This document shows positions 10,819 to 58,086 of a DNA stretch of 64,000 nt, piece after piece. The notes below the pieces were generated by a model. That model was not told where the DNA came from. It saw only the letters and a list, made by a program, of their open reading frames with translations, and did no database searches. The stretch comes from Macrostomum lignano (taxonomy: Eukaryota). The position numbers and the translations under genes were made by a program. The first letter of the stretch is position 1. The number at the start of each line of letters is the position of its first letter. The DNA is taken from positions 414,575 through 478,574 of the forward strand of contig NIVC01000481.1 of assembly GCA_002269645.1 (NCBI GenBank), in the 5' to 3' direction.

Positions 10819-13743
<2,925 letters not shown>

Positions 13744-13762
<19 letters not shown>

Positions 13763-30300: not shown

Positions 30301-33300
30301 AGGGTCATAGCAACTTAGGGGTCATATGAGTCATATTTGAGGGTCATGAGGCATAGGAGTCATGCTCGAGGTTCATTAAAACTTAGGGGTCATGTGAGTC
30401 ATACCTGAAGGTCATAGCAAATAAGGAGTCATAGGAGTCATATTTGAGGGTCATGAGTCATACTTAAGTGTCACAACTAATTTACTTAGGAATCATAGGA
30501 GTCAATCTCGAGAGTCATAGCAACTTAGGAGTCATAGGAGTCATATTTTAGGGTCATGGGTCGTACTTAGGGTCATAGCTAATTTACTTATGGGTTTTGA
30601 GTCATAGGAGTCATGCTCGGAGGTCATGGCAACTTAGGGGTCATAGGAGTCATACCTGAAGGTTATAGCAAATAGGATTCATATTCGAGGCCCATTGCAA
30701 TGCTACTTAAAAGTCAGGGTTTTTACTTTATTAGGGTCATAGCCAATAAGAGGTCGTACTCAATGGTCATAGCTACCTAACTATACTCATAGGTACTTAA
30801 GAGAACTTATACAAGCAAGTCTTACAAAATGTCACTCAAGGCCAGCCTCTCAGCTGCATCGGCCAGCCTGCTGCTAAACACAAACGTGTTAAGAACTCGT
30901 TTTGAATCAGTGCGCAGCAGCCACATCCGGTGCTTGGGTCGGGCGGCGTAGACTTTAGCCGCCACCGCCGCCGCCGCCGGAGCCGGGCTGGTCTCGGCGA
31001 ACAGGCAGGCCCCAAACGGGCCGTTTCTTGGTTTGTCCGAGCCGAGTTGAAAAAATGTCCGACTGTCTGCGTTGCACAGCACCGCCCGGCACCTGGTGGA
31101 GACCAACAGCAGGTGCTGCTGACTGCCCCAGTCTGAGTCCAGCTGCACTATGGGACCTTCCTGCGGCAGCGTCAGCACCTGCTCGCATGTGGCGTCCAGC
31201 GCGAACAGCTCCCGGGGCTGGGCGCGGGCGGGTGTTGCAACTTTTTTTTAATACTTCATTCTCGATTTAGTCTCACAGCAACTCAACACTCAGATGGGCA
31301 TGGCTGCCAACCTCCCCATCTCCCCCTCAGGACCCCTCCTCTCACTCTCCTCATTCTCATTTTCCTTCTCAACCCCGCTCTCAATCTCCCTCAATCTCTC
31401 TCAATCTCCCTCAATCTCCCTCAATCTCCCTCAATCTCCCTCAATCTCCCTCAATCTCCCTCAATCTCTCTCAATCTCCCTCAATCTCTCTCAATCTCCC
31501 TCAATCTCTCTCAATCTCCCTCAATCTCTCTCAATTTTCCTCAATCTCCCTCAATCTCCCTCAATCTCTCTCAATCTCCCTCAATCTCCCTCAATCTCCC
31601 TCAATCTCCCTCAATCTCTCTCAATCTCTCTCAATCTCCCTCAATCTCTCTCAATCTCCCTCAATCTCCCTCAATCTCCCTCAATCTCTCTCAATTTTCC
31701 TCAATCTCCCTCAATCTCTCTCAATCTCCCTCAATCTCCCTCAATCTCCCTCAATCTCCGTCAATCTCCCTCAATTTCTCTCAATCTCCCTCAGTCTCTC
31801 TCTATCTCCCTTATCTCTCTCAATCTCCCTCAATCTCTCTCAATCTCTCTCAATCTCCCCTCAATCTCTCTCAATCTCTCTCAATCTCCCCTCAATCTCT
31901 CTCAATCTCTCTCAATCTCTCTCAATCTCCCTCAATCTCCCTCAATCTCCCTCAATTTTCCTCAATCTCCCTCAATCTCTCTCAATCTCCCTCAATCTCC
32001 CTCAATCTCCCTCAATCTCCGTCAATCTCCCTCAATTTCTCTCAATCTCCCTCAGTCTCTCTCTATCTCCCTTATCTCTCTCAATCTCCCTCAATCTCTC
32101 TCAATCTCTCTCAATCTCCCCTCAATCTCTCTCAATCTCTCTCAATCTCCCTCAATCTCTCTCAATCTCTCTCAATCTCCCCTCAATCTCTCTCAATCTC
32201 CCCTCAATCTCTCTCAATCTCCCCTCAATCTCTCTCAATCTCTCTCAATCTCTCTCAATCTCTCTCAATCTCTCTCAATCTCCCCTCAATCTCTCTCAAT
32301 CTCTCTCAATCTCTCTCAATCTCCCTCAATCTCTCTCAATCTCCCCTCAATCTCTCTCAATCTCTCTCAATCTCTCTCAATCTCCCTCAATCTCTCTCAA
32401 TCTCCCTCAGTCTCTCTCAATCTCCCCTCAATTTCTCTCAATCTCTCTCAATCTCTCTCAATCTCCCCTCAATCTCCCTCAATCTCTCTCAAACTCCCCT
32501 CAATCTCCCTCAATCTCCCCTCAATCTCCCTCAATCTCCCCTCAATCTCCCCTCAACCTTTTTCAATCTCTATCAATCTCACCCTCAATCCCCCCTAATT
32601 TCTTTAAATCTCTCTAAATCTTCCCAAATCTCTCTTTAATCTCCCATTGAATCCCCGCAACCCCAGCAGCACCCCCTACCGAGTCGGCCATAGAAGTAGA
32701 CGACACCATTCCATCGGAGTCGCCAGAGAACAGACAGCCGGCAGTCCAGGCCACACAGGTGATTACTCTACCGGCGTGCATCCGATTAATCCTGACCCGA
32801 TCTGCCCAGCACCTGCGCTGGGTGCTGTGCAATTCGTACACCTCAACGTGGCCGTTGCTAAGGGCGCAGGCTAGATAGCGATCGTTAGGAGACAGAGCCA
32901 ACAGGCGGGCCACGCCGTTATTATTGAGACTGAAGTGCAGGCGCAGCTGCAGACTGGCGGAACCAAACGGGGCGGTGAGAATTCGAACTACTCCGGAATT
33001 TGAGCACAGGGCCAGCGAGCCGCCGCTGGTCAGAGATATCGCTGTGGTCTGCGGAGGGTGGAGTGCCGCTTTCTGTCAGACACATCGCTGTTGCGAGGTC
33101 AGTGAAGCGAGAAAAAGAAAGGAAGAAGCAAGAAAAATTGAGACAAGGGAGAGGAAGACAGTCGTGGGGGAGACAAAGGTGAGGGAGACGGAGGAGAGGG
33201 AGACAGGGGAGAGGGAGACAGGGGAGAGGGAGACAGGGGAGAGGGAGACAGGGGAGAGGAAGACAGGGGAGAGGGTGACAGGGGAGAGGGAGACAGGGGA

Positions 33301-33765: not shown

Positions 33766-33989
33766 TCGCAGTAATCTTATTTAAACTGACTAGCTGGACT
33801 CAGTGCCAGTGAGTTGGACTCTGCAAATCGCGATTTCAAAGAGCAGTAAACAGAGAAATCACACTCCCCTCACTCTAGTAAGGGAGTCATGCATCAAGTT
33901 TTTTTCCACAGGGTTTGTCAATGTGTAGTGAGTCAGTAGGTCAGCAGCAGTTGTCAGTCAGTTCGTCAGTAGTTCAGTGGTTCGGTAGG

Positions 33990-35850: not shown

Positions 35851-36022
35851 ATCAAATTTCTGAATTAACCAAACTACAAAACTGAATAGCGATGGAATTG
35901 GAATCAGACGGGATAATATATATATGATGCTGTGTTATATAGGGAAAAGTACAAAAAGTACTTCTAGAACTTTAATAGAAATTAAAAATAGAAGACCACC
36001 AATGCTTACACGGCGACATAAA

Positions 36023-38111
36023 TTAAGTCTCCATACCGTCTTCAAGATTGAGCACAAAAGTGACGGGTTTCATGCCACTCTGAGCACTGTCAGTAACATT
36101 TAGCACTGTATTAGAAAGCAGGCCTAATTCTGCCAGAGATTTGTCTAAATTGTCAGCTAATTGATCGCGCAGAAATGACAAGTCCATGTATAGGGTGACA
36201 TCGCGACCTTCAACGCAAGCGGTGAGGCTCGGCCGTGTCATACCGTGCTCCGACTTCAACTGGTTGATGACGGTCTGCAGCGAGTCCCGACTATTGAACG
36301 TCAGAGGCTTGGGCGGAGGCTGGCCGCACACGTCGCACTGGGGATTCCGCTCCAACGGCACAACATTCACGGCTACGCCTTCGATGTCGCTGAAGTTAGC
36401 GAAGTTGTTCAACAGCGGGTAGCAGCCGGTGATGGCTTTGAATACTTCGGTGACGCACTGGGCGCTGATGACAGCGTTGGTGGATGCCACGGCTGGAATG
36501 ATGTGCTTCACTACGCCCTGAGTCAGCCGGAAATCCGGTTCCCGGATGCCGAATTGTCTGGCACGTTTGCAGGCCTCCGTGCGAATCCAGTCCACGTGGT
36601 GTGGGTCGTCTCCGTCTACGGGCACCTGGGAATGGGCAATTTAGTGATCAGTGGGGTCGGGAATTTAGTGATCAGTGGTGTGGGGAATTTAGTGATCAGT
36701 GGGGTGGGCAATTTAGTGATCAGTGGGGTGGGCAATTTAGTGATCAGTGGGGTGGACAATTTAGTGATCAGTGGGGTGGGGAATTTAGTGATCAGGTAGA
36801 GTGGGGGAATTTAGTGATCGATGGGGTGGGGAATTTAGTGATCAGGTAGAGTGGGGGAATTTAGTGATCAATGGGGTGGGGAATTTAGTGATCAGGTAGA
36901 GTGGGGGAATTTAGTGATCAGGTAGAGTGGGGGAATTTAGTGATCAATGGGGTGGGGAATTTGGAATTTAATGATCAGGTAGAGTGGAGAATTTTTAGTG
37001 ATCAGGTTGAGTGGGGAATTTAGAGTGATCAGGTTAAGTGGGGAATTTAGAGTGCTCAGGTTAAGTGGGGAATTTAGAGTGATCAGGTTAAGTGGGGAAT
37101 TTAGAGTGCTCAGGTTAAGTGGGGAATTTAGAGTGATCAGGTTAAGTGGGGAATTTATAGTGATCAGGTTGAGTGGAAAATTTAGTTATCAGGTTGAGTG
37201 GGGAATTTAGTTATCAGGTTGAGTGGGGAATTTAGTGATCAGATAGAGTGGGGAATTTAGTGATCAGATAGAGTGGGGAATTTAGAGTGATTGGTGAAGT
37301 GGGGAATTTAGAGTGATCGGTGAAGTGGGGAATTTAGAGTGATCGGTGAAGTGGGGAATTTAGTGATCAGGTTGAGTGGGGAATTTAGTGATCAGATAGA
37401 GTGGGGAATTTAGAGTGATCGGTGAAGGGGGAATTTAGAGCGATCGGTGAAGTGGGGAATTTAGAGTGATCGGTGAAGTGGGGAATTTAGTGATCACATA
37501 GATTGAGGAGTTTATTGAAAAAGAGTCGGGAATCTAGAGAACCATAGTGGGGAAATTTAATGAGTTGATGAAGGGGGAATTTAGAGAGGTAAAGTGTGGG
37601 AATTTGGTGGAGTAGAGTAGGAAATGTAGTAAGTAAGCTACAGAGAAATTGAAGAGTTGAATAGCTTAGTAACTTCATAATTGGAACGGGGTATTTAGAG
37701 AGCTGCAAATGCAGAGCAATTGTATTTAATATACTTTTCATTCCGTTTTCATTACCTCTTCGCCGAACGGCCACTCCTGGGGCCACTGCATAATCCTGGC
37801 GAACTCGATGCAGTGCTCTGGCAGCCGGGGAGTGTGGGCCAGAGTGCACAGAGGGAACCCCTGCTGGGTGCTGCTATAGAGGTCGGCTGTGCACTCCAGA
37901 CACGGGGTGGCGTGGGCTCGAACCACCCGGCAGTGGCCCTGAAATCCTTGGGTGCCGCCGTCGATCAGGGGGATGACGCTGGTCGGAATGGGCTGATCAG
38001 ACTCGTCAAATTGAACCAGGGAGCAGACTATCTGGTTGAGGCGGCGCCTGCGGGGATTGAGATTCGGCTACTCTTGTACCTGGATACAGACAGACGGACA
38101 GACAGACACAG

Positions 38112-38155
<44 letters not shown>

Positions 38156-38275
38156 GCAGACAGACAGGCAGACAGACAAACACAGACAGACAGACAGACG
38201 GACAGACAGACAAACAGACAGACAGGCAGACAGATAGACAGACAGGCAGACAGACAGACAAACACAGACAGACAG

Positions 38276-38319
<44 letters not shown>

Positions 38320-38881
38320 GCAGACAGACAGACGGACAGACACAGACAGACAGACAGGCAGACAGACAGGCAGACAGACAGACAGACAGGCAGACAGACA
38401 GACACACAGACAGACAGACAGACAGACAGACACAGTCCCGCTCGCACCTGGCCTGCACGCTGTCCAGGCCGCACACGATGCACATGAACTGCTTGTAGAA
38501 CTCCAACGGTTTGTCCTCCAGTTTGCCAAAGTGCGGCGTCACCCGGCAGCCGGAGACGCGGCGTTCAACAAATTCGGCAGCAACGACGGCCTTCGGCCTG
38601 CCGATGTCTTTGGGGCGGAACAGAAACTGGCGATTCAGATTGGACAGATCGATGGTGTCCATGTCAATCAGGTGCAGATTGACAAAGCCGCTCAGGGCGA
38701 GGTCTTTCAGCATCTCGCAGCCGAGACCGCCAGCCCCGACTACCAATATCTGGACAAGATCCGAGCGAATCGCTGAGAATAGCTCAGGATCGGGTTCGAA
38801 CTCAGGACCGCCCAAGGGCCCGGCCCGCTCTAATAGCCGACGCACGTGGCGCCAACGATTGTCTGTGCCCGGCGAGCTCTG
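36023..38881 (-). CDS. UBA3: NEDD8-activating enzyme E1 catalytic subunit; start codon not found
   Basis: Exons 38881 (or 38878)-38448, 38047-37756 and 36625-36023, with consistent phases. Motifs [45 protein letters not shown], catalytic [33 protein letters not shown] and a C-terminal E2-binding region. 442 codons encoded; there is an in-frame TAA just upstream of the acceptor. Confidence 0.93.
36632..37500. repeat. G-rich minisatellite of 24-25 bp (GGGGAATTTAGTGATCA core) in UBA3 intron 2
   Basis: Read directly; subunit variants drift along the array. Confidence 0.9.
38087..38432. repeat. (ACAG)n microsatellite in UBA3 intron 1
   Basis: Read directly from the sequence. Confidence 0.95.
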
Positions 38882-39248
38882 CTGTTGGAATAAATTCGTT
38901 TAGCGATTTTCAAAACTACTGCTACTAAAGATACTACTACCTTAATAATTGGGTAAAACTATTGGAAAACTACACGAGAAAACCACCGCATTGATTAAAA
39001 ATCCAGGGCCTAAGCAAACTAGCACTAGAGTATGTAGTATATGCTGCACAAGTATCGCACAATTCATCGATAAGAGCCAAGAATATAAGATAAGAATAAG
39101 TTTGCTGTCATGCCGTTGCAGCATTTGACCGATTTATATCCAAGCACCTGCGAAGTACTGCACTTGCTTTGCGTTTAACCAACTCTTCCAGAAACCCTAA
39201 GCAAGAAATAAATTCTTTTTTTTTCTGAAGAAAAAGCAATCCGAAACA

Positions 39249-40754
39249 ATGCGAGGCCTAATATTTCTAACCGCTGACAATTCTTTGAAGTTGAAGAACG
39301 ATCTGCAAGATCCAAAGCCGAACAGCGAAGAGGTCGTAGTACGGGTTAGCCATTGCGGAGTATGCGGTACAGACCTGCACATCATGCAAGGTCACTTTCC
39401 CGTGGCTGTGGAGACTCAACTAGTCCTGGGCCACGAGTTCACCGGCTGGCTGCAGGAAGCGAATGCCGATAGCAAGAAAAATCAAGACGGAAACTTCGGC
39501 ACTCCCGTGTTTGTCAATCCGAATGGTCGGTGCGGCTACTGCATCGGTTGCCAAGAGGTTTGTTTCACTTAGCAACACAGTAAAATAATAAATATTCGGA
39601 CAAAAGCTGCGGGCACCCTGACGCAAGGTCTTCGGAGACATCGTCTCACAACCAGAGTTGACGGCAATTTTGTCCATTTCGCTGACTCCTAAGCACAAAC
39701 AAGCGCACCAATACTGTACGCAAGCACGCACTCACACACGCTCACAGGGGTGGACAGCGGCCCTCTGACTTTCGAATCGTCAGGCACGACACCCACGGTG
39801 CGTTTAAAGTTGGCCCTCACTGGTGTCAATCGCACGACAACCACTCAACCAACTTGGTTGCACACGGAATCAAACCAGGGGTCGTTTTGCTAGAGTCAGA
39901 CGGGTTTACCGCTGAGCTGCTCTGCCCCTAGCAACAGGCATTGCATAAACCAGCCTTAATGAATTTTCCCGTGAAAAAAACACTCGATCAAAACACCCTA
40001 TTAGGGCCGAGTGCACTTCTGCGGCTACCGAGCTATGGGTGCCGCTTCAGTGGGCGTCGGTCGAGACGGCGGATGGGCGGAGTTCGTGGCGGTGCCAGCC
40101 AATCAGGTTCACCGAATGCCTAAAGATCTGCCGATGTCAACTGGAATTCTGGTTGAGCCAATCAGCTGCGTACTACACGGCTACGATCGGCTGTTCACCG
40201 CTGGAGCAGCCAAGCAGCTGGACCCAACTGACTCTGTGCTCATTCTGGGTGCTGGCATCATCGGCCTGCTCTGGGCCTGTCTGCTGCACCAGCGGGGCTA
40301 CCGGACCATCCAAATCAGCGACATCTCTCCGGAGCGACGCCAGGTCGTTACTAACATGAAATTGGACGGCATGTCGCCTAAACAACCAACCGAGCTGCTT
40401 AGCAACACCTACCAGCTGATTGTGGACTGCACCGGAGTGCCAAAGGCGCTCGAGTCGGCCTATAAAAGCCTGTCTAGCGGTGGCATCCTGTGTGTGTTCG
40501 GATGCGCCCCGGAGGGAGTCAAGCTGAACCTGCCGTATTATGACCTGGTCAACCGAGAGATCACCGTTGTGTTTTGTCGCGTTAATCCGTTCACAAGCGA
40601 CCGAGCTATCGACCTGACGCGTCGTTTACATCTGGACGGCTACCTGGACTTGGACCGGCTGGGCATTAAGGTATTTGGACTCGACCAGCATCAGCAAGCC
40701 TTTGAAATGTTGAACAATCGTCAGGCACCTAAGGTTGCTTTCCGGCTAAACTGA
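39249..40754 (+). CDS. Zinc-dependent medium-chain dehydrogenase (sorbitol/threonine/arabinitol-DH-like), copy 1, 352 aa
   Basis: Exons 39249-39557 and 40005-40754 (phase 0). Motifs: CGVCGTD, GHE, structural-Zn C-x2-C-x2-C-x7-C (CGYCIGCQEGRVHFC), VEPISC, Rossmann ILGAGIIG, and DISPERR with an acidic residue suggesting NAD preference. Confidence 0.92.
39578..39928 (-). mobile_element. tRNA-derived SINE, family A copy 2, inserted in the intron of MDR copy 1
   Basis: Minus-strand tRNA-like head (AGCTCAGCGGT ... GGTTTGATTCC ... ACCA); perfect 8-bp TSD TAGCAACA (39570-39577 and 39929-39936); body shares ordered motifs with 6381-6749. Confidence 0.8.
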
Positions 40755-41419: not shown

Positions 41420-42560
41420 ATGCGCGGCCTAGTGTTTGTAACTAGCGACAGCTCACTACAGCTGCAGGATGATATTCAAGTGCCTAAGCCGACTTCTGAA
41501 GAGCTACTAGTACGGGTTAGCCACTGCGGTGTATGCGGAACAGACCTGCACATCATGCAGGGCCATTTCCCCGTGGCTGCTCGATCTACTCTCGTACTCG
41601 GACACGAGTTCACTGGCTGGCTAATTGATGGCGATGGAAGCCAGCCAAGTAAAGGCAAATCCAACACGCCTGTTTTTGTCAATCCGAACGGACAATGCGG
41701 CTACTGCAACGATTGCCAACGGGTAAAACTTTCATGGAAGCATTTAATTGACATTTGAAATGCACTATTGGATAGAAAGACAAGTTTTTGCATATCATTG
41801 CAGGGTCTGGTGCACTTCTGCCCCCAGCGTACCTTAGGCGCTGGAGCTGTAGGTCTGGCAAGAGACGGCGGCTGGGCGGAGTTCGTAGCGGTGCCAGCCA
41901 ATCAGGTTCACCGAATGCCTAAAGATCTGCCGGTGTCAACTGGAATTCTGGTTGAGCCAATCAGCTGTGTACTACACGGCTACGATCGGCTGTTCACCGC
42001 TGGAGCAGCCAAGCAGCTGGACCCAACTGACTCGGTGCTCATTCTGGGTGCTGGCATCATCGGCTTGCTTTGGGCCTGCCTGCTGCACCAGCGGGGCTAC
42101 CGGACCATCCACATCAGCGACATCTCTCCGGAGCGACGCCAGGCTGTTGAAAACTTGAAACTTGAAACTTGACGGCGTGTTGCCTAGGCAACCAACCGAG
42201 CTGCTTAGCAACACCTACCAGCTGATTGTGGATTGCACCGGAGTGCCAAAGGCGCTCGAGTCGGCCTATAAAAGCCTGTCTAGCGGTGGCATCCTGTGCG
42301 TGTTCGGATGCGCCCCGGAGGGAGTCAAACTGAACCTGCCGTATTATGACCTGGTCAACCGAGAGATCACCGTTGTGTTTTGTCGCGTTAATCAGTTTGC
42401 TAGCGATCGAGCCATCGACCTGACGTACCAGCTGCACCGACAGGGTTACCTGGACTTCAACCGGTTGGGCATTCAAGTCTACCCACTCGATCAGCACCAA
42501 AAAGCATTCGAAACGTTAGGCAAGCGTCAGGCACCGAAGGTGGCCTTCCAACTGGGCTGA
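41420..42560 (+). pseudogene. MDR dehydrogenase copy 2, frameshifted by a 7-bp tandem duplication
   Basis: Exons 41420-41722 and 41804-42560, with the intron at the same position as in copy 1. AAACTTG is present three times at 42151-42171 where two copies keep the frame, giving TGA at 42170-42172. The downstream frame stays paralogous to the stop at 42558-42560. Confidence 0.82.
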
Positions 42561-43256: not shown

Positions 43257-45092
43257 TCAATCGAAAGCGGCTCTTTTACGCTTAGCTCCAACAATTAATT
43301 TTTGCACTTCAACAGCTTTGCTCGCCTCCGAATGAGTTGGATCCACGTGATAATTTGGATCGGTGAACAGAGCGCCAAATCGTTCGTCGGCTGCCACATC
43401 GGCTGCTGTCACTGTCGAGTGAGCACCAGCGACCCGGTCGGCAACTAGCATTGCCAACTCCTGCTCACTAGCCGGCATTTCTCCTTCGCCTTCGCCACTG
43501 TCACCTTCGTCACTATCGCCGCTGCCGCCGGCACCGTCAGCCTTAGAAGGCAGCAGGCCAGCTTTAGCCAGTTTAGCCCGTTTCGCTTGCTCCTTTAATC
43601 GGCGACGCCTCGTGCGCTTGCGAGATTCTTTCGGCTCCGATTGCTCCTGCTGCTTCTGGCCCTTGGCACTTGACTTGGCCTTAGCATCGACGTCCTGCAT
43701 GGCTAAAGCGATATCGTCGGGCAGCTCGTCGTCTGAGAAGGTGGCCGGCAACTCGCTGCCATTGTCGGCGTTATCTTCGGCTTTGTCGGCTCCGACATCG
43801 TCTCCTAACAGCGCCCGACGAAGCTTCGCCGTTCTGGCTTTGATGGCGTCACTGTCCTCTTCATCATTGTCGGATTCATCGCTACTCAAATTGAGAAACT
43901 CCGACAGTCTATTAAGATCCGGATCGTCTTCGTTGAAATCGGTCTTGTTGAACAGGCCCTGCAGGTAGCGAGTTCGCTCAGTCGGTGTCTCGTCCCAGGT
44001 TAGGCCGACTTTTGTACGGTTTAATAGACCAGCGGTTAGTTTGCGCGGCTTATAAGCAGCCGGGTCCAGACCCGTGCACCGCGTTACAAGATGACGCCAC
44101 TCGTCTGGCACATCGTCCGGACCGCCGAACTCCATACCCGCCGGCACGTAGCTCAATCTAAGACACCCGCCGGTGCTTTCCACCTCTAGACCGGAGCACT
44201 GCTCATAGACACTGGTTGCGGCTGGAGTGCAATCAAACTCCGCTACAGCGTAATAGTACCACAATCGTTTTAGCTGGTAGCGTCGAAGACTTCGACGATA
44301 AGAGCCAGACGAAGTTGACGACTTCTTAGCCGGATCGGACAACGCTTTACGGCGCAACTCCAACGGTCCAACTTTGGCCTCTTCGGCCATTCGATGTTGA
44401 CCGAATTTCGAGGGATAAACTGTGACACTTAGCAAGCGACCAACAGACGATGGACAGTGACTGGAGAGCAGCATAAACAGATCGGTAGCTTTGATCTGCT
44501 CCCAGTCTTGCTGAGTAACAGCTAGTCGATTTGTTGGAACAACCGACTGGTCGTTTTCTTCATCAATCGCTGCGCTGGACGAGCGTTCGAGATTGCGAAA
44601 CTCCTCGTCGCTGCTGCTTCTCGCTTCGCTGTCGCTGCCTTCTTCATCATTGTCTGCCTCATTTTGCTCATCATCATCATCATCCTCTTCATCTGAGTCG
44701 GATTCTTCCTCAGCTACTTCTTCATCTTCTTCGTCTTCATCCTTATCCACAGCATCCTCACTCTCTTGATCTTCTTGGTTGTCAGAACTAGCTTCGACCT
44801 CATCATTATCATCCTCATCCTCACCGTGACGACCCTGTTTCAATCCGTAGAACCTGCTCAGATCCTGTCGCGAGCTCATGGCCACTGGCCTGCCCCTCTT
44901 ATCGCTGCGTACGCTGGTGGAGAACTCAGGATCTGTAAACATGGCGCCAAATCGATCGTCAATTTCAACGCGAGTTGCTTTGCGAGCCGAAGCCGATCAA
45001 TAGCGCGGATCGGTGGTCACGTGACCGAAGCGCGGATCCGAGCGCCATTCTTCGTCGCGGTTGCCTGCTGCGTTGCGACGCTTCTTAACCAT
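43257..45092 (-). CDS. ESF1: ESF1 (pre-rRNA processing, NUC153) homolog; intronless, with an in-frame TGA at codon 32
   Basis: ATG at 45092 gives MVKKRR...DPRFGHVTTDPRY*SASARKATRVEIDDRFGAMFTDPEF...DKRGR, followed by an acidic tract, NRLAVTQQDWEQIKATDLFMLLSS, YQLKRLWYYYAVAEFD, LTWDET and the NUC153-like DERFGALFTDPNYHVDPT. 611 codons if read through, or 561 aa from the ATG at 44942. Confidence 0.88.

Positions 45093-46841: not shown

Positions 46842-58086
<11,245 letters not shown>

What the first reader, a model, noticed from the sequence alone, without database searches (positions are those of the whole stretch)
38878..39248. UBA3 has no start codon but begins at an in-frame splice acceptor: candidate for a spliced-leader-supplied AUG
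Seen: the conserved UBA3 N-terminus ([13 protein letters not shown]) runs back to TTATTCCAACAG|CAG|AGC, where both tandem acceptors (exon starts at 38881 or 38878) are phase 0. An in-frame TAA lies just upstream. The best nearby upstream donor (38940) has a TAG in the required frame and no ATG. The rest of this essential gene is intact and near full length (442 codons). Established: platyhelminth spliced leaders end in a conserved AUG that can serve as the initiator. Inference: SL trans-splicing provides Met1 here, making NEDD8 activation dependent on trans-splicing. The flatworm identity of the window is itself inferred.
Basis: partly seen in the sequence, partly recalled or inferred. Interest (0 to 1): 0.72.

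Follow-up and report, generated by a model that had tools for sequence, protein, structure and literature searches.

The report
Flatworm UBA3 start codon from spliced leader
In the flatworm Macrostomum lignano the essential NEDD8-activating enzyme gene UBA3 has no start codon in the genome and most likely gets its AUG from the trans-spliced leader RNA, a mechanism already known in flatworms, so this is a clean new example and not a new phenomenon.

Summary
The window is Macrostomum lignano (assembly GCA_002269645.1, contig NIVC01000481.1). UBA3 lies on the minus strand as three exons and 442 codons. Its frame runs back to a tandem CAG|CAG acceptor (exon start 38881 or 38878, both phase 0). An in-frame TAA lies seven codons upstream (38902-38900), with no ATG between it and the acceptor. 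The next in-frame ATG is codon 57, after the GAGGLG ATP loop.

The M. lignano spliced leader is 35 nt and ends in ATG. Joined to either acceptor it gives MQSSPG... or MSSPG..., with a normal UBA3 N-terminal length. Public models of this gene are 5'-partial and begin exactly at Q (NCBI) or S (UniProt). Three ~99% identical genomic copies share the architecture, keep intact ORFs and differ mostly by synonymous changes.

Caveats: no SL-junction read could be inspected. One paralog is annotated with a cis-spliced start, MALHDVQ|SSPG. Its ATG exon lies antisense inside a neighbouring ADH-like gene 2.7 kb upstream, and the same sequence is in the window (41566-41546). Strict dependence on trans-splicing is therefore not shown.

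Initiation from the SL AUG is established in Schistosoma (Cheng et al. 2006) and acknowledged for Macrostomum. Verdict: new member of a known kind, modest interest.

The parts
38879..38884 (-). Tandem (NAGNAG-type) 3' splice acceptors CAG|CAG. The exon starts at 38881 (Q) or 38878 (S), both phase 0. This is the proposed SL trans-splice site.
   Evidence: Sequence. NCBI PAA82304.1 starts QSSPG at 38881 and UniProt A0A1I8HX37 starts SSPG at 38878. Each acceptor matches 5 of 6 positions of the published trans-acceptor motif [T/C]TNCAG.
38448..38881 (-). UBA3 coding exon 1 (434 nt; [10 protein letters not shown]...DSVQA-R). Donor CAG|GTGCGA.
   Evidence: 100% identical to M. lignano UBA3 P0121.
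37756..38047 (-). UBA3 coding exon 2 (292 nt), which contains the catalytic-Cys motif [11 protein letters not shown].
   Evidence: Alignment to human UBA3 structures 1YOV/1R4M.
36023..36625 (-). UBA3 coding exon 3 with stop TAA at 36025-36023. An ATTAAA lies at 35976.
38900..38902 (-). In-frame TAA seven codons upstream of the first acceptor. It closes the frame to any contiguous upstream ATG.
   Evidence: Identical in all three copies.
38897..38899 (-). ACG, the only near-cognate codon in frame between the TAA and the acceptor. Its context is poor (T at -3, A at +4).
   Evidence: Conserved as ACG in all three copies.
38711..38713 (-). First in-frame genomic ATG (codon 57, GCEM), located after the GAGGLG nucleotide-binding loop.
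   Evidence: Alignment to human UBA3.
38882..39248 (.). 367-bp divergent intergenic region between UBA3 and the proximal ADH-like gene (ATG 39249, + strand). It is the presumed promoter and outron. The ADH 5'UTR reaches at least 39121 according to the copy-C annotation.
39050..39067 (-). Weak cis candidate MNCAIL|GTGCAG (phase 0). It is not used in any public model.
41546..41566 (-). ATGGCCCTGCATGATGTGCAG|gtctgt, a cryptic upstream exon (MALHDVQ) antisense within exon 1 of the distal ADH-like gene. It is annotated as the UBA3 start in paralog PAA61255.1 only.

Best explanation
The UBA3 pre-mRNA of Macrostomum lignano is SL trans-spliced at the tandem acceptor CAG|CAG (exon start 38881 or 38878). 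The pre-mRNA probably starts in the 367-bp divergent promoter region shared with the ADH-like neighbour. The 35-nt spliced leader ends in AUG, and because both acceptors are phase 0 that AUG becomes codon 1. The products are [11 protein letters not shown]... or [10 protein letters not shown].... Shown here: the gene structure, the absence of any usable genomic ATG, the phase of the acceptors, the organism, and the fact that all three genomic copies share this layout and are under purifying selection. Taken from the literature: the SL sequence and its terminal ATG, the frequency of trans-splicing in this species, and the experimental precedent in Schistosoma. Inferred: that SL is actually joined at this acceptor, and that ribosomes start on the SL AUG.
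For: Organism: P0121 is 100% identical and named M. lignano UBA3, and L002 (NIVC01000481.1) is 100% identical to the window over 10 kb. There is no in-frame ATG between the TAA at 38902 and codon 57, and both acceptors are phase 0. SL = CGGTCTCTTACTGCGAAGACTCAATTTATTGCATG. About 30% of genes are trans-spliced, 70% of trans-spliced genes are conserved with human, and the acceptor motif is [T/C]TNCAG (PMC8629364). SL joined to the exon gives MQSSPG/MSSPG, with a single AUG in the chimeric leader. Public CDS models are 5'-partial and start exactly at Q (38881) or S (38878). TransDecoder calls a 5'-partial ORF only if it runs to the transcript's 5' end. Transcript ends in this annotation were set from SL-bearing reads or SL-trimmed transcripts (PMC5730564). 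The predicted N-terminus has 8-9 residues between the Met and the RW motif, against about 9-10 in other flatworm UBA3s. Three copies have intact 442-codon ORFs with synonymous:non-synonymous differences of 5:1, 5:2 and 8:3, while the neighbouring ESF1 copy shows that decay does occur in this polyploid. Precedent: over 40 S. mansoni cDNAs need the SL AUG (Cheng 2006, cited in PMC9851317). All flatworm SLs end in ATG (PMC12582326). The Macrostomum SL ATG is called a translation start codon in PMC10468722.
Against: I could not examine any SL-junction read, 5' RACE product or N-terminal peptide. No transcript-derived M+QSSPG or M+SSPG protein is in the 15-billion-sequence collection, although none of the rival forms is either. 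Each acceptor matches the published trans-acceptor motif at 5 of 6 positions, and the polypyrimidine tract is weak. A cis-spliced model with an in-frame ATG is annotated in a 99%-identical paralog, and the same sequence exists in the window. The three copies are too similar (~99%) for conservation of the ATG-less layout to count as independent evidence.
Confidence: 0.75

Rival explanations
1. A cis-spliced upstream exon supplies the start. Transcription on the minus strand through the ADH-like genes (from an internal start, or as read-through from ESF1) uses the donor CAG|GTCTGT at 41545 and the second acceptor (38878), giving MALHDVQ|SSPG....
For: This is exactly the deposited model for paralog PAA61255.1 (448 aa, not flagged partial). 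The 21-nt exon plus donor is identical in the window (41566-41546) and in copy C. Flatworm acceptors are often shared between cis- and trans-splicing (PMC12582326).
Against: The exon is the antisense of the conserved ADH motif GTDLHIMQGH, so its ATG and GT arise from the complement of His and Thr-Asp codons. The equivalent site in the proximal ADH copy reads GTG and not ATG. The intron would span 2.7 kb, including a whole opposite-strand gene. The donor GTCTGT does not fit the species consensus GT[G/A]AG. It was called in only 1 of 3 near-identical copies, and the others are 5'-partial at the acceptor. The ATG is the first AUG only if transcription starts within about 170 nt, inside ADH exon 1. 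Otherwise up to 26 upstream ATGs precede it.
Confidence: 0.12
2. Non-AUG initiation on an mRNA that is not trans-spliced. The in-frame ACG at 38899-38897, directly after the TAA, starts translation and gives (M)[10 protein letters not shown]....
For: ACG is a recognised near-cognate start codon (PMC9851317 discussion). It is the only such codon in the open stretch. The N-terminal length it gives (13 residues between the start codon and RW) would be acceptable.
Against: The context is poor (T at -3, A at +4). It needs an mRNA that keeps the outron, with four upstream AUGs at 39124, 39111, 39067 and 38991 if transcription starts that far upstream. No public model extends 5' of the acceptor in the two copies with partial CDS.
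Confidence: 0.04
3. Another short cis exon inside the 367-bp intergenic region provides the ATG, for example MNCAIL|GTGCAG (39067-39050) or the ATG at 39124.
For: The phase is compatible, and the sequence is identical in all three copies.
Against: GTGCAG after CTT is a poor donor for this species. No public model uses it. The copy-C ADH model places the ADH 5'UTR out to 39121, so a UBA3 start upstream of 39067 would have to overlap the divergent transcript. The intron would be only about 168 nt. The exact look-up of MNCAIL+QSSPG was negative.
Confidence: 0.03
4. The window copy is a non-functional duplicate or an assembly or annotation artefact, with a functional ATG-bearing copy elsewhere in this polyploid genome.
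For: M. lignano is a hidden polyploid with 79% BUSCO duplication (PMC10468722). The adjacent ESF1 copy carries a copy-specific nonsense codon.
Against: All three retrievable copies have the same ATG-less 5' end, intact 442-codon ORFs, conserved splice sites and mostly synonymous differences. The homology search found no other M. lignano UBA3 cluster.
Confidence: 0.03

Closest known systems
[quoted passage not shown]
   Same: A flatworm SL ending in AUG. The acceptor is in frame with a conserved ORF that lacks its own start codon. The SL AUG is the only AUG in the leader.
   Different: A different flatworm lineage (free-living Macrostomorpha versus parasitic Trematoda) and a different gene. Here SL addition and initiation are inferred and not demonstrated by cDNA or translation assays. 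The trematode and cestode UBA3 orthologs retrieved here carry their own genomic Met.
slORFs: open reading frames created by SL addition (slORFfinder, PMC9851317)
   Same: The same concept: an ORF whose start codon comes from the SL.
   Different: slORFs in nematodes, ascidians and euglenozoa mostly use non-AUG NUG codons and are often novel or short ORFs. Here the ORF is the canonical, essential protein itself.
SL trans-spliced, human-conserved genes of M. lignano (Ustyantsev and Berezikov 2021, PMC8629364; Wudarski et al. 2017, PMC5730564)
   Same: The same organism, the same single 35-nt SL, and a conserved housekeeping gene of the class most often trans-spliced. The acceptor ends in CAG.
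   Different: Those papers do not analyse use of the SL AUG as a start codon, and I found no table naming UBA3. The gene is not in an operon by their criteria, because opposite-strand genes intervene.
NAGNAG tandem acceptors (alternative 3' splice sites three nucleotides apart)
   Same: CAGCAG, with both positions in phase, predicts proteoforms that differ by one residue (Q). The two public annotation sets start at Q and at S respectively.
   Different: Here the tandem site would be used in trans-splicing. Use of both sites rests only on the 5' ends of deposited models.

Membership tests
SL-AUG-initiated flatworm mRNA (Cheng et al. 2006 type) | The organism has an SL RNA whose leader ends in AUG. 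| tested here: met
   Organism identified as M. lignano. SL sequence ending in ATG taken from PMC8629364. The SL is conserved in two other Macrostomum species (PMC10468722).
SL-AUG-initiated flatworm mRNA (Cheng et al. 2006 type) | [quoted passage not shown] | tested here: met
   Exon starts 38881 and 38878 are both phase 0. SL+exon translates to MQSSPG... and MSSPG....
SL-AUG-initiated flatworm mRNA (Cheng et al. 2006 type) | No usable genomic in-frame AUG for the conserved protein. | tested here: met
   TAA at 38902, with no ATG before codon 57, which lies after the GAGGLG loop. The same holds in three copies. Caveat: a distal cis exon with an ATG is annotated in one paralog.
SL-AUG-initiated flatworm mRNA (Cheng et al. 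2006 type) | The mature mRNA carries the SL joined at this acceptor. | not testable with these tools
   Only indirect evidence: deposited 5'-partial CDSs begin exactly at the two acceptors, and the pipeline sets such ends from SL reads. No reads or SL track were accessible. Supplements did not list the gene.
SL-AUG-initiated flatworm mRNA (Cheng et al. 2006 type) | Translation starts at the SL AUG (protein N-terminus M-Q-S-S-P-G or M-S-S-P-G). | not testable with these tools
   No proteomic or ribosome-profiling data are available. The exact-sequence look-ups were negative for every candidate form.
UBA3 / NEDD8-activating enzyme E1 catalytic subunit | ThiF adenylation domain with a GxGxxG loop, the catalytic-Cys motif, and a C-terminal E2-binding domain, with full-length similarity to solved UBA3. 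| tested here: met
   P0121 carries PF00899 and PF08825. E = 1e-142 to human UBA3 chains 1YOV_B, 1R4M_B and 3GZN_B over residues 7-422. [10 protein letters not shown] and FPLCT align to [10 protein letters not shown] and FPMCT.
Downstream gene of an SL-resolved operon | An upstream same-strand gene at short distance, with no opposite-strand gene in between. | tested here: not met
   The nearest same-strand upstream gene (ESF1, stop near 43260) is about 4.4 kb away, and two opposite-strand ADH-like genes lie between. UBA3 is head-to-head with ADH. Operon criteria from PMC8629364.

The most novel reading that the evidence does not exclude
Every genomic copy of the sole NEDD8 E1 catalytic subunit in M. 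lignano depends obligately on SL trans-splicing for its initiator codon. A tandem CAG|CAG trans-acceptor yields two N-terminal proteoforms (MQSSPG and MSSPG). Neddylation, and hence cullin-RING ligase activity, would then be hard-wired to the trans-splicing machinery in an animal where 85% of stem-cell genes are trans-spliced. That would be a possible regulatory coupling and not just an annotation quirk.
Probability: 0.5. Interest if true: 0.35.

Novelty: new member of a known kind. Interest (0 to 1): 0.25.

Why it matters
The finding is a clean, checkable example of a universally essential enzyme gene with no start codon in the genome, in a transgenesis-capable flatworm model. It is useful in three ways. 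First, it explains why the public M. lignano UBA3 entries are flagged partial or lack Met, and it shows how they should be annotated (Met supplied by the SL). Second, it gives a natural reporter for testing SL-AUG initiation in vivo in a free-living flatworm, where so far only the schistosome work exists. Third, it warns that ATG-less conserved genes in flatworm assemblies are not pseudogenes. It does not reveal a new mechanism.

Tried and rejected
1. Rfam at gathering thresholds and ARAGORN found nothing on the window. The SL sequence, in full with up to 3 mismatches or as its last 11-35 nt exact, is absent from the window and from the three loci. No SL RNA gene is nearby.
2. The exon-1-only protein search gave at most 66% identity and no self hit, which briefly suggested an unsampled organism. 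The full-length query found the 100% M. lignano entry. The listed hits of the short query were all 256 aa or shorter, so that search seems to consider only targets of similar length.
3. I first guessed that the MALHDV start of paralog PAA61255.1 would be absent from the window. That was wrong: the identical ATG exon is at 41566-41546. Only the proximal ADH copy has GTG there.
4. Exact look-ups of ten candidate full-length proteins (SL-Met forms of copies A, B and C, MNCAIL, MNLFQQ, MALHDVQ) were all negative and therefore uninformative.
5. Supplementary tables of three M. lignano papers do not name the gene or UBA3. The PNAS 2015 genome paper is not held.
6. The pseudogene reading was rejected because all three copies are intact and differ mostly by synonymous changes.
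7. A 9-mer of the SL (TTACTGCGA) just before the HPS5-like ATG is a chance match, with 0.4 expected per window.
8. I considered variant genetic codes when I saw the in-frame TGA in ESF1. The paralog has CGA there, so it is an ordinary nonsense change.

Full report
**What is in the sequence.** The feature lies on the minus strand. Reading 5'->3' on that strand, the UBA3 frame is ...[44 protein letters not shown].... The context ttattccaaCAG|CAG|AGC offers two AG acceptors three nucleotides apart. The exon would start at 38881 (CAG = Q) or 38878 (AGC = S), and both are phase 0. An in-frame TAA sits at 38902-38900, seven codons upstream of 38881. The six codons between it and the first acceptor (ACG AAT TTA TTC CAA CAG) hold no ATG.

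The only ATGs on this strand in the 367-bp interval up to the neighbouring gene are at 39124, 39111, 39067 and 38991. MNCAIL|GTGCAG (39067-39050) is phase-compatible.

A three-exon model gives exactly 442 codons: 38881-38448, 38047-37756 and 36625-36023, with donors CAG|GTGCGA and GAG|GTAATG and stop TAA. The first in-frame genomic ATG is codon 57 (38713-38711), immediately after [10 protein letters not shown]. In the alignment to solved human UBA3 (1YOV_B, 1R4M_B, 3GZN_B; E about 1e-142, residues 7-422) that stretch is the glycine-rich nucleotide-binding loop. By established E1 enzymology, a protein starting there would lack the adenylation site.

**Which organism.** A search with exon 1 alone found nothing above 66% identity. 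The full-length model found P0121, which is 100% identical, 441 aa, and named NEDD8-activating enzyme E1 catalytic subunit of Macrostomum lignano. The next hits, at 53-54%, are led by trematodes. The locus of NCBI protein PAA82304.1 (L002, GCA_002269645.1, contig NIVC01000481.1) is 100% identical to the window over the 10 kb tested.

**The spliced leader.** M. lignano uses a single 35-nt SL, CGGTCTCTTACTGCGAAGACTCAATTTATTGCATG. About 30% of genes are trans-spliced (38.8% in the original annotation). The enriched trans-acceptor motif is [T/C]TNCAG, and 70% of trans-spliced genes are conserved with human (PMC8629364; PMC5730564). All reported flatworm SLs end in ATG (PMC12582326). In Schistosoma mansoni more than 40 cDNAs need that AUG to start translation in the correct frame (Cheng et al. 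2006, as summarised in PMC9851317). For Macrostomum, the legend to Fig. 2c of PMC10468722 calls the terminal ATG a translation start codon and notes the annotation problems it causes.

Joining the SL to either acceptor in silico gives [11 protein letters not shown]... or [10 protein letters not shown].... The SL AUG is the only AUG in the chimeric leader. The predicted N-terminus has 8-9 residues between the Met and the RW motif, against about 9-10 in other flatworm UBA3s.

**Indirect RNA evidence from public models.** The 90% cluster of P0121 has six M. lignano members:
- PAA82304.1, the window's own gene, flagged partial, starts QSSPG. That is exactly at 38881, with ttattccaacag immediately upstream.
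- UniProt A0A1I8HX37 and two splice variants start SSPG, exactly at 38878.
- PAA55670.1, flagged partial, starts GTDNRW.
- PAA61255.1 starts MALHDVQSSPG.

In the published pipeline, SL sequences were trimmed, and transcript 5' ends were set from SL-bearing reads (TBONE). ORFs were then called with TransDecoder (PMC5730564). A 5'-partial ORF is called only when it runs to the very 5' end of the transcript. If the transcript extended upstream, the TAA at 38902 would have closed the frame. Models that begin at Q and at S therefore imply mature 5' ends at the two acceptors. This is what SL trans-splicing at a NAGNAG site predicts. It is strong circumstantial evidence but not a junction read.

**Paralogs.** M. 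lignano is a hidden polyploid. I retrieved three copies: A (the window), B (L001) and C (L003). The 367-bp upstream region differs at only four or five positions between them, and the acceptor, TAA and ACG are identical. All three have intact 442-codon ORFs with the same splice sites. Pairwise synonymous:non-synonymous differences are 5:1, 5:2 and 8:3.

In the same window, the ESF1-like gene has a copy-specific CGA->TGA nonsense codon (44999-44997) that its paralog lacks. Decay of redundant copies therefore does occur here, but UBA3 shows none. The ATG-less 5' end is a shared property of functional copies. Because the copies are about 99% identical, this is not independent evolutionary evidence.

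**The cis-spliced alternative.** PAA61255.1 (copy B) begins at L001:6001 with ATGGCCCTGCATGATGTGCAG|gtctgt and splices to the second acceptor 2.67 kb downstream. That exon lies inside, and antisense to, exon 1 of the distal ADH-like gene. It is the reverse complement of the codons for the conserved ADH motif GTDLHIMQGH. Its ATG and GT are therefore by-products of His and Thr-Asp codons on the other strand.

The identical sequence is present in the window at 41566-41546 and in copy C. The equivalent site in the proximal ADH copy reads GTG. The donor GTCTGT does not fit the species consensus GT[G/A]AG. The intron would contain an entire opposite-strand gene. The ATG is the first AUG only if transcription begins within about 170 nt upstream. 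Otherwise up to 26 ATGs precede it back to the ESF1 stop.

I read it as a cryptic or minor cis-splice onto the trans-acceptor, possibly from read-through of ESF1. This is consistent with the reported sharing of acceptors between cis- and trans-splicing in flatworms. It keeps the claim of strict dependence on trans-splicing unproven.

**Other rivals.**
- ACG at 38899 is the only near-cognate codon in the open stretch. Its context is poor, and it needs an mRNA that keeps the outron.
- MNCAIL|GTGCAG has a poor donor and no model support. It would need a transcription start upstream of 39067, while the copy-C ADH model places the divergent ADH 5'UTR out to 39121.
- UBA3 is not an operon-downstream gene by the published criteria, because opposite-strand genes intervene.

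**What I could not do.** No tool gave access to M. lignano reads or to the SL track. Exact look-ups of ten candidate full-length proteins were all negative. Supplementary tables did not name the gene. No SL RNA gene lies in the window.

**Verdict.** The organism is a flatworm with an AUG-terminated SL. SL-supplied initiation is by far the most economical explanation, and I give it a confidence of about 0.75. The mechanism has been known since 2006 and is acknowledged for this genus. The finding is therefore a new, well-defined member of a known kind: useful for annotation and as an experimental handle, but of modest interest (0.25).

Noticed in passing
window 44997-44999 (minus strand; ESF1-like gene, ATG at 45092-45090): Codon 32 of the ESF1-like gene is TGA in the window copy (…DPRY*SASARK…) but CGA (Arg) in paralog L001, a copy-specific CpG nonsense change. 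The NCBI model for the window copy starts at a downstream Met (561 aa, against 611 and 610 aa in the paralogs). It could be a decaying duplicate in this polyploid, or a read-through or re-initiation case.
   Followed up: partly
window 45120-45092 (minus strand): ESF1 has a consensus TTTCAG| acceptor 28 nt before its ATG. If the SL is added there, the SL AUG is out of frame and opens a 12-codon uORF (MLPTAALDLHNG*) that overlaps the real start codon. This illustrates the opposite consequence of an AUG-terminated SL.
   Followed up: partly
window 39249-40754 and 41420-42560 (+ strand); L002 2322-5633: There are two tandem Zn-dependent ADH/sorbitol-dehydrogenase-like paralogs. The deposited NCBI model for this contig fuses them into one 352-aa CDS, while the copy-C contig has them as separate models, one of them 5'-partial and reaching window-equivalent 39121.
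   Followed up: partly
window 38048-38447 and 36626-37755 (UBA3 introns): Both introns are almost entirely satellite. Intron 1 is (CTGT)n and measures 400, 218 and 202 bp in copies A, B and C. Intron 2 is a roughly 30-nt minisatellite (…CACTAAATTCCCCAC…) and measures 1130, 1513 and 1301 bp. The exons are about 99% identical while intron lengths vary widely.
   Followed up: partly
window 39700-39945 (minus strand; intron 1 of the proximal ADH-like gene): A stretch of about 245 bp starts with a tRNA-like sequence (ggggcagagcagctcagcggt…ggtttgattcc…). It may be a SINE relic. It is single-copy in the window, with no ARAGORN or Rfam hit.
   Followed up: partly
window 33766-33774 (minus strand): The 9-mer TTACTGCGA, identical to an internal part of the SL, sits directly before the ATG of the HPS5-like gene. 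It is consistent with chance: 0.4 matches expected per window, and 32 of 100 shuffles have at least one.
   Followed up: yes
window 11793-13759 (+), 56867-57256 (-), 30825-33075 (-): Other genes in the window are a rhodopsin-type (melatonin-receptor-like) GPCR, an STK32/YANK-like kinase exon, and the HPS5-like WD40 gene (ATG 33765). I did not analyse them further.
   Followed up: no
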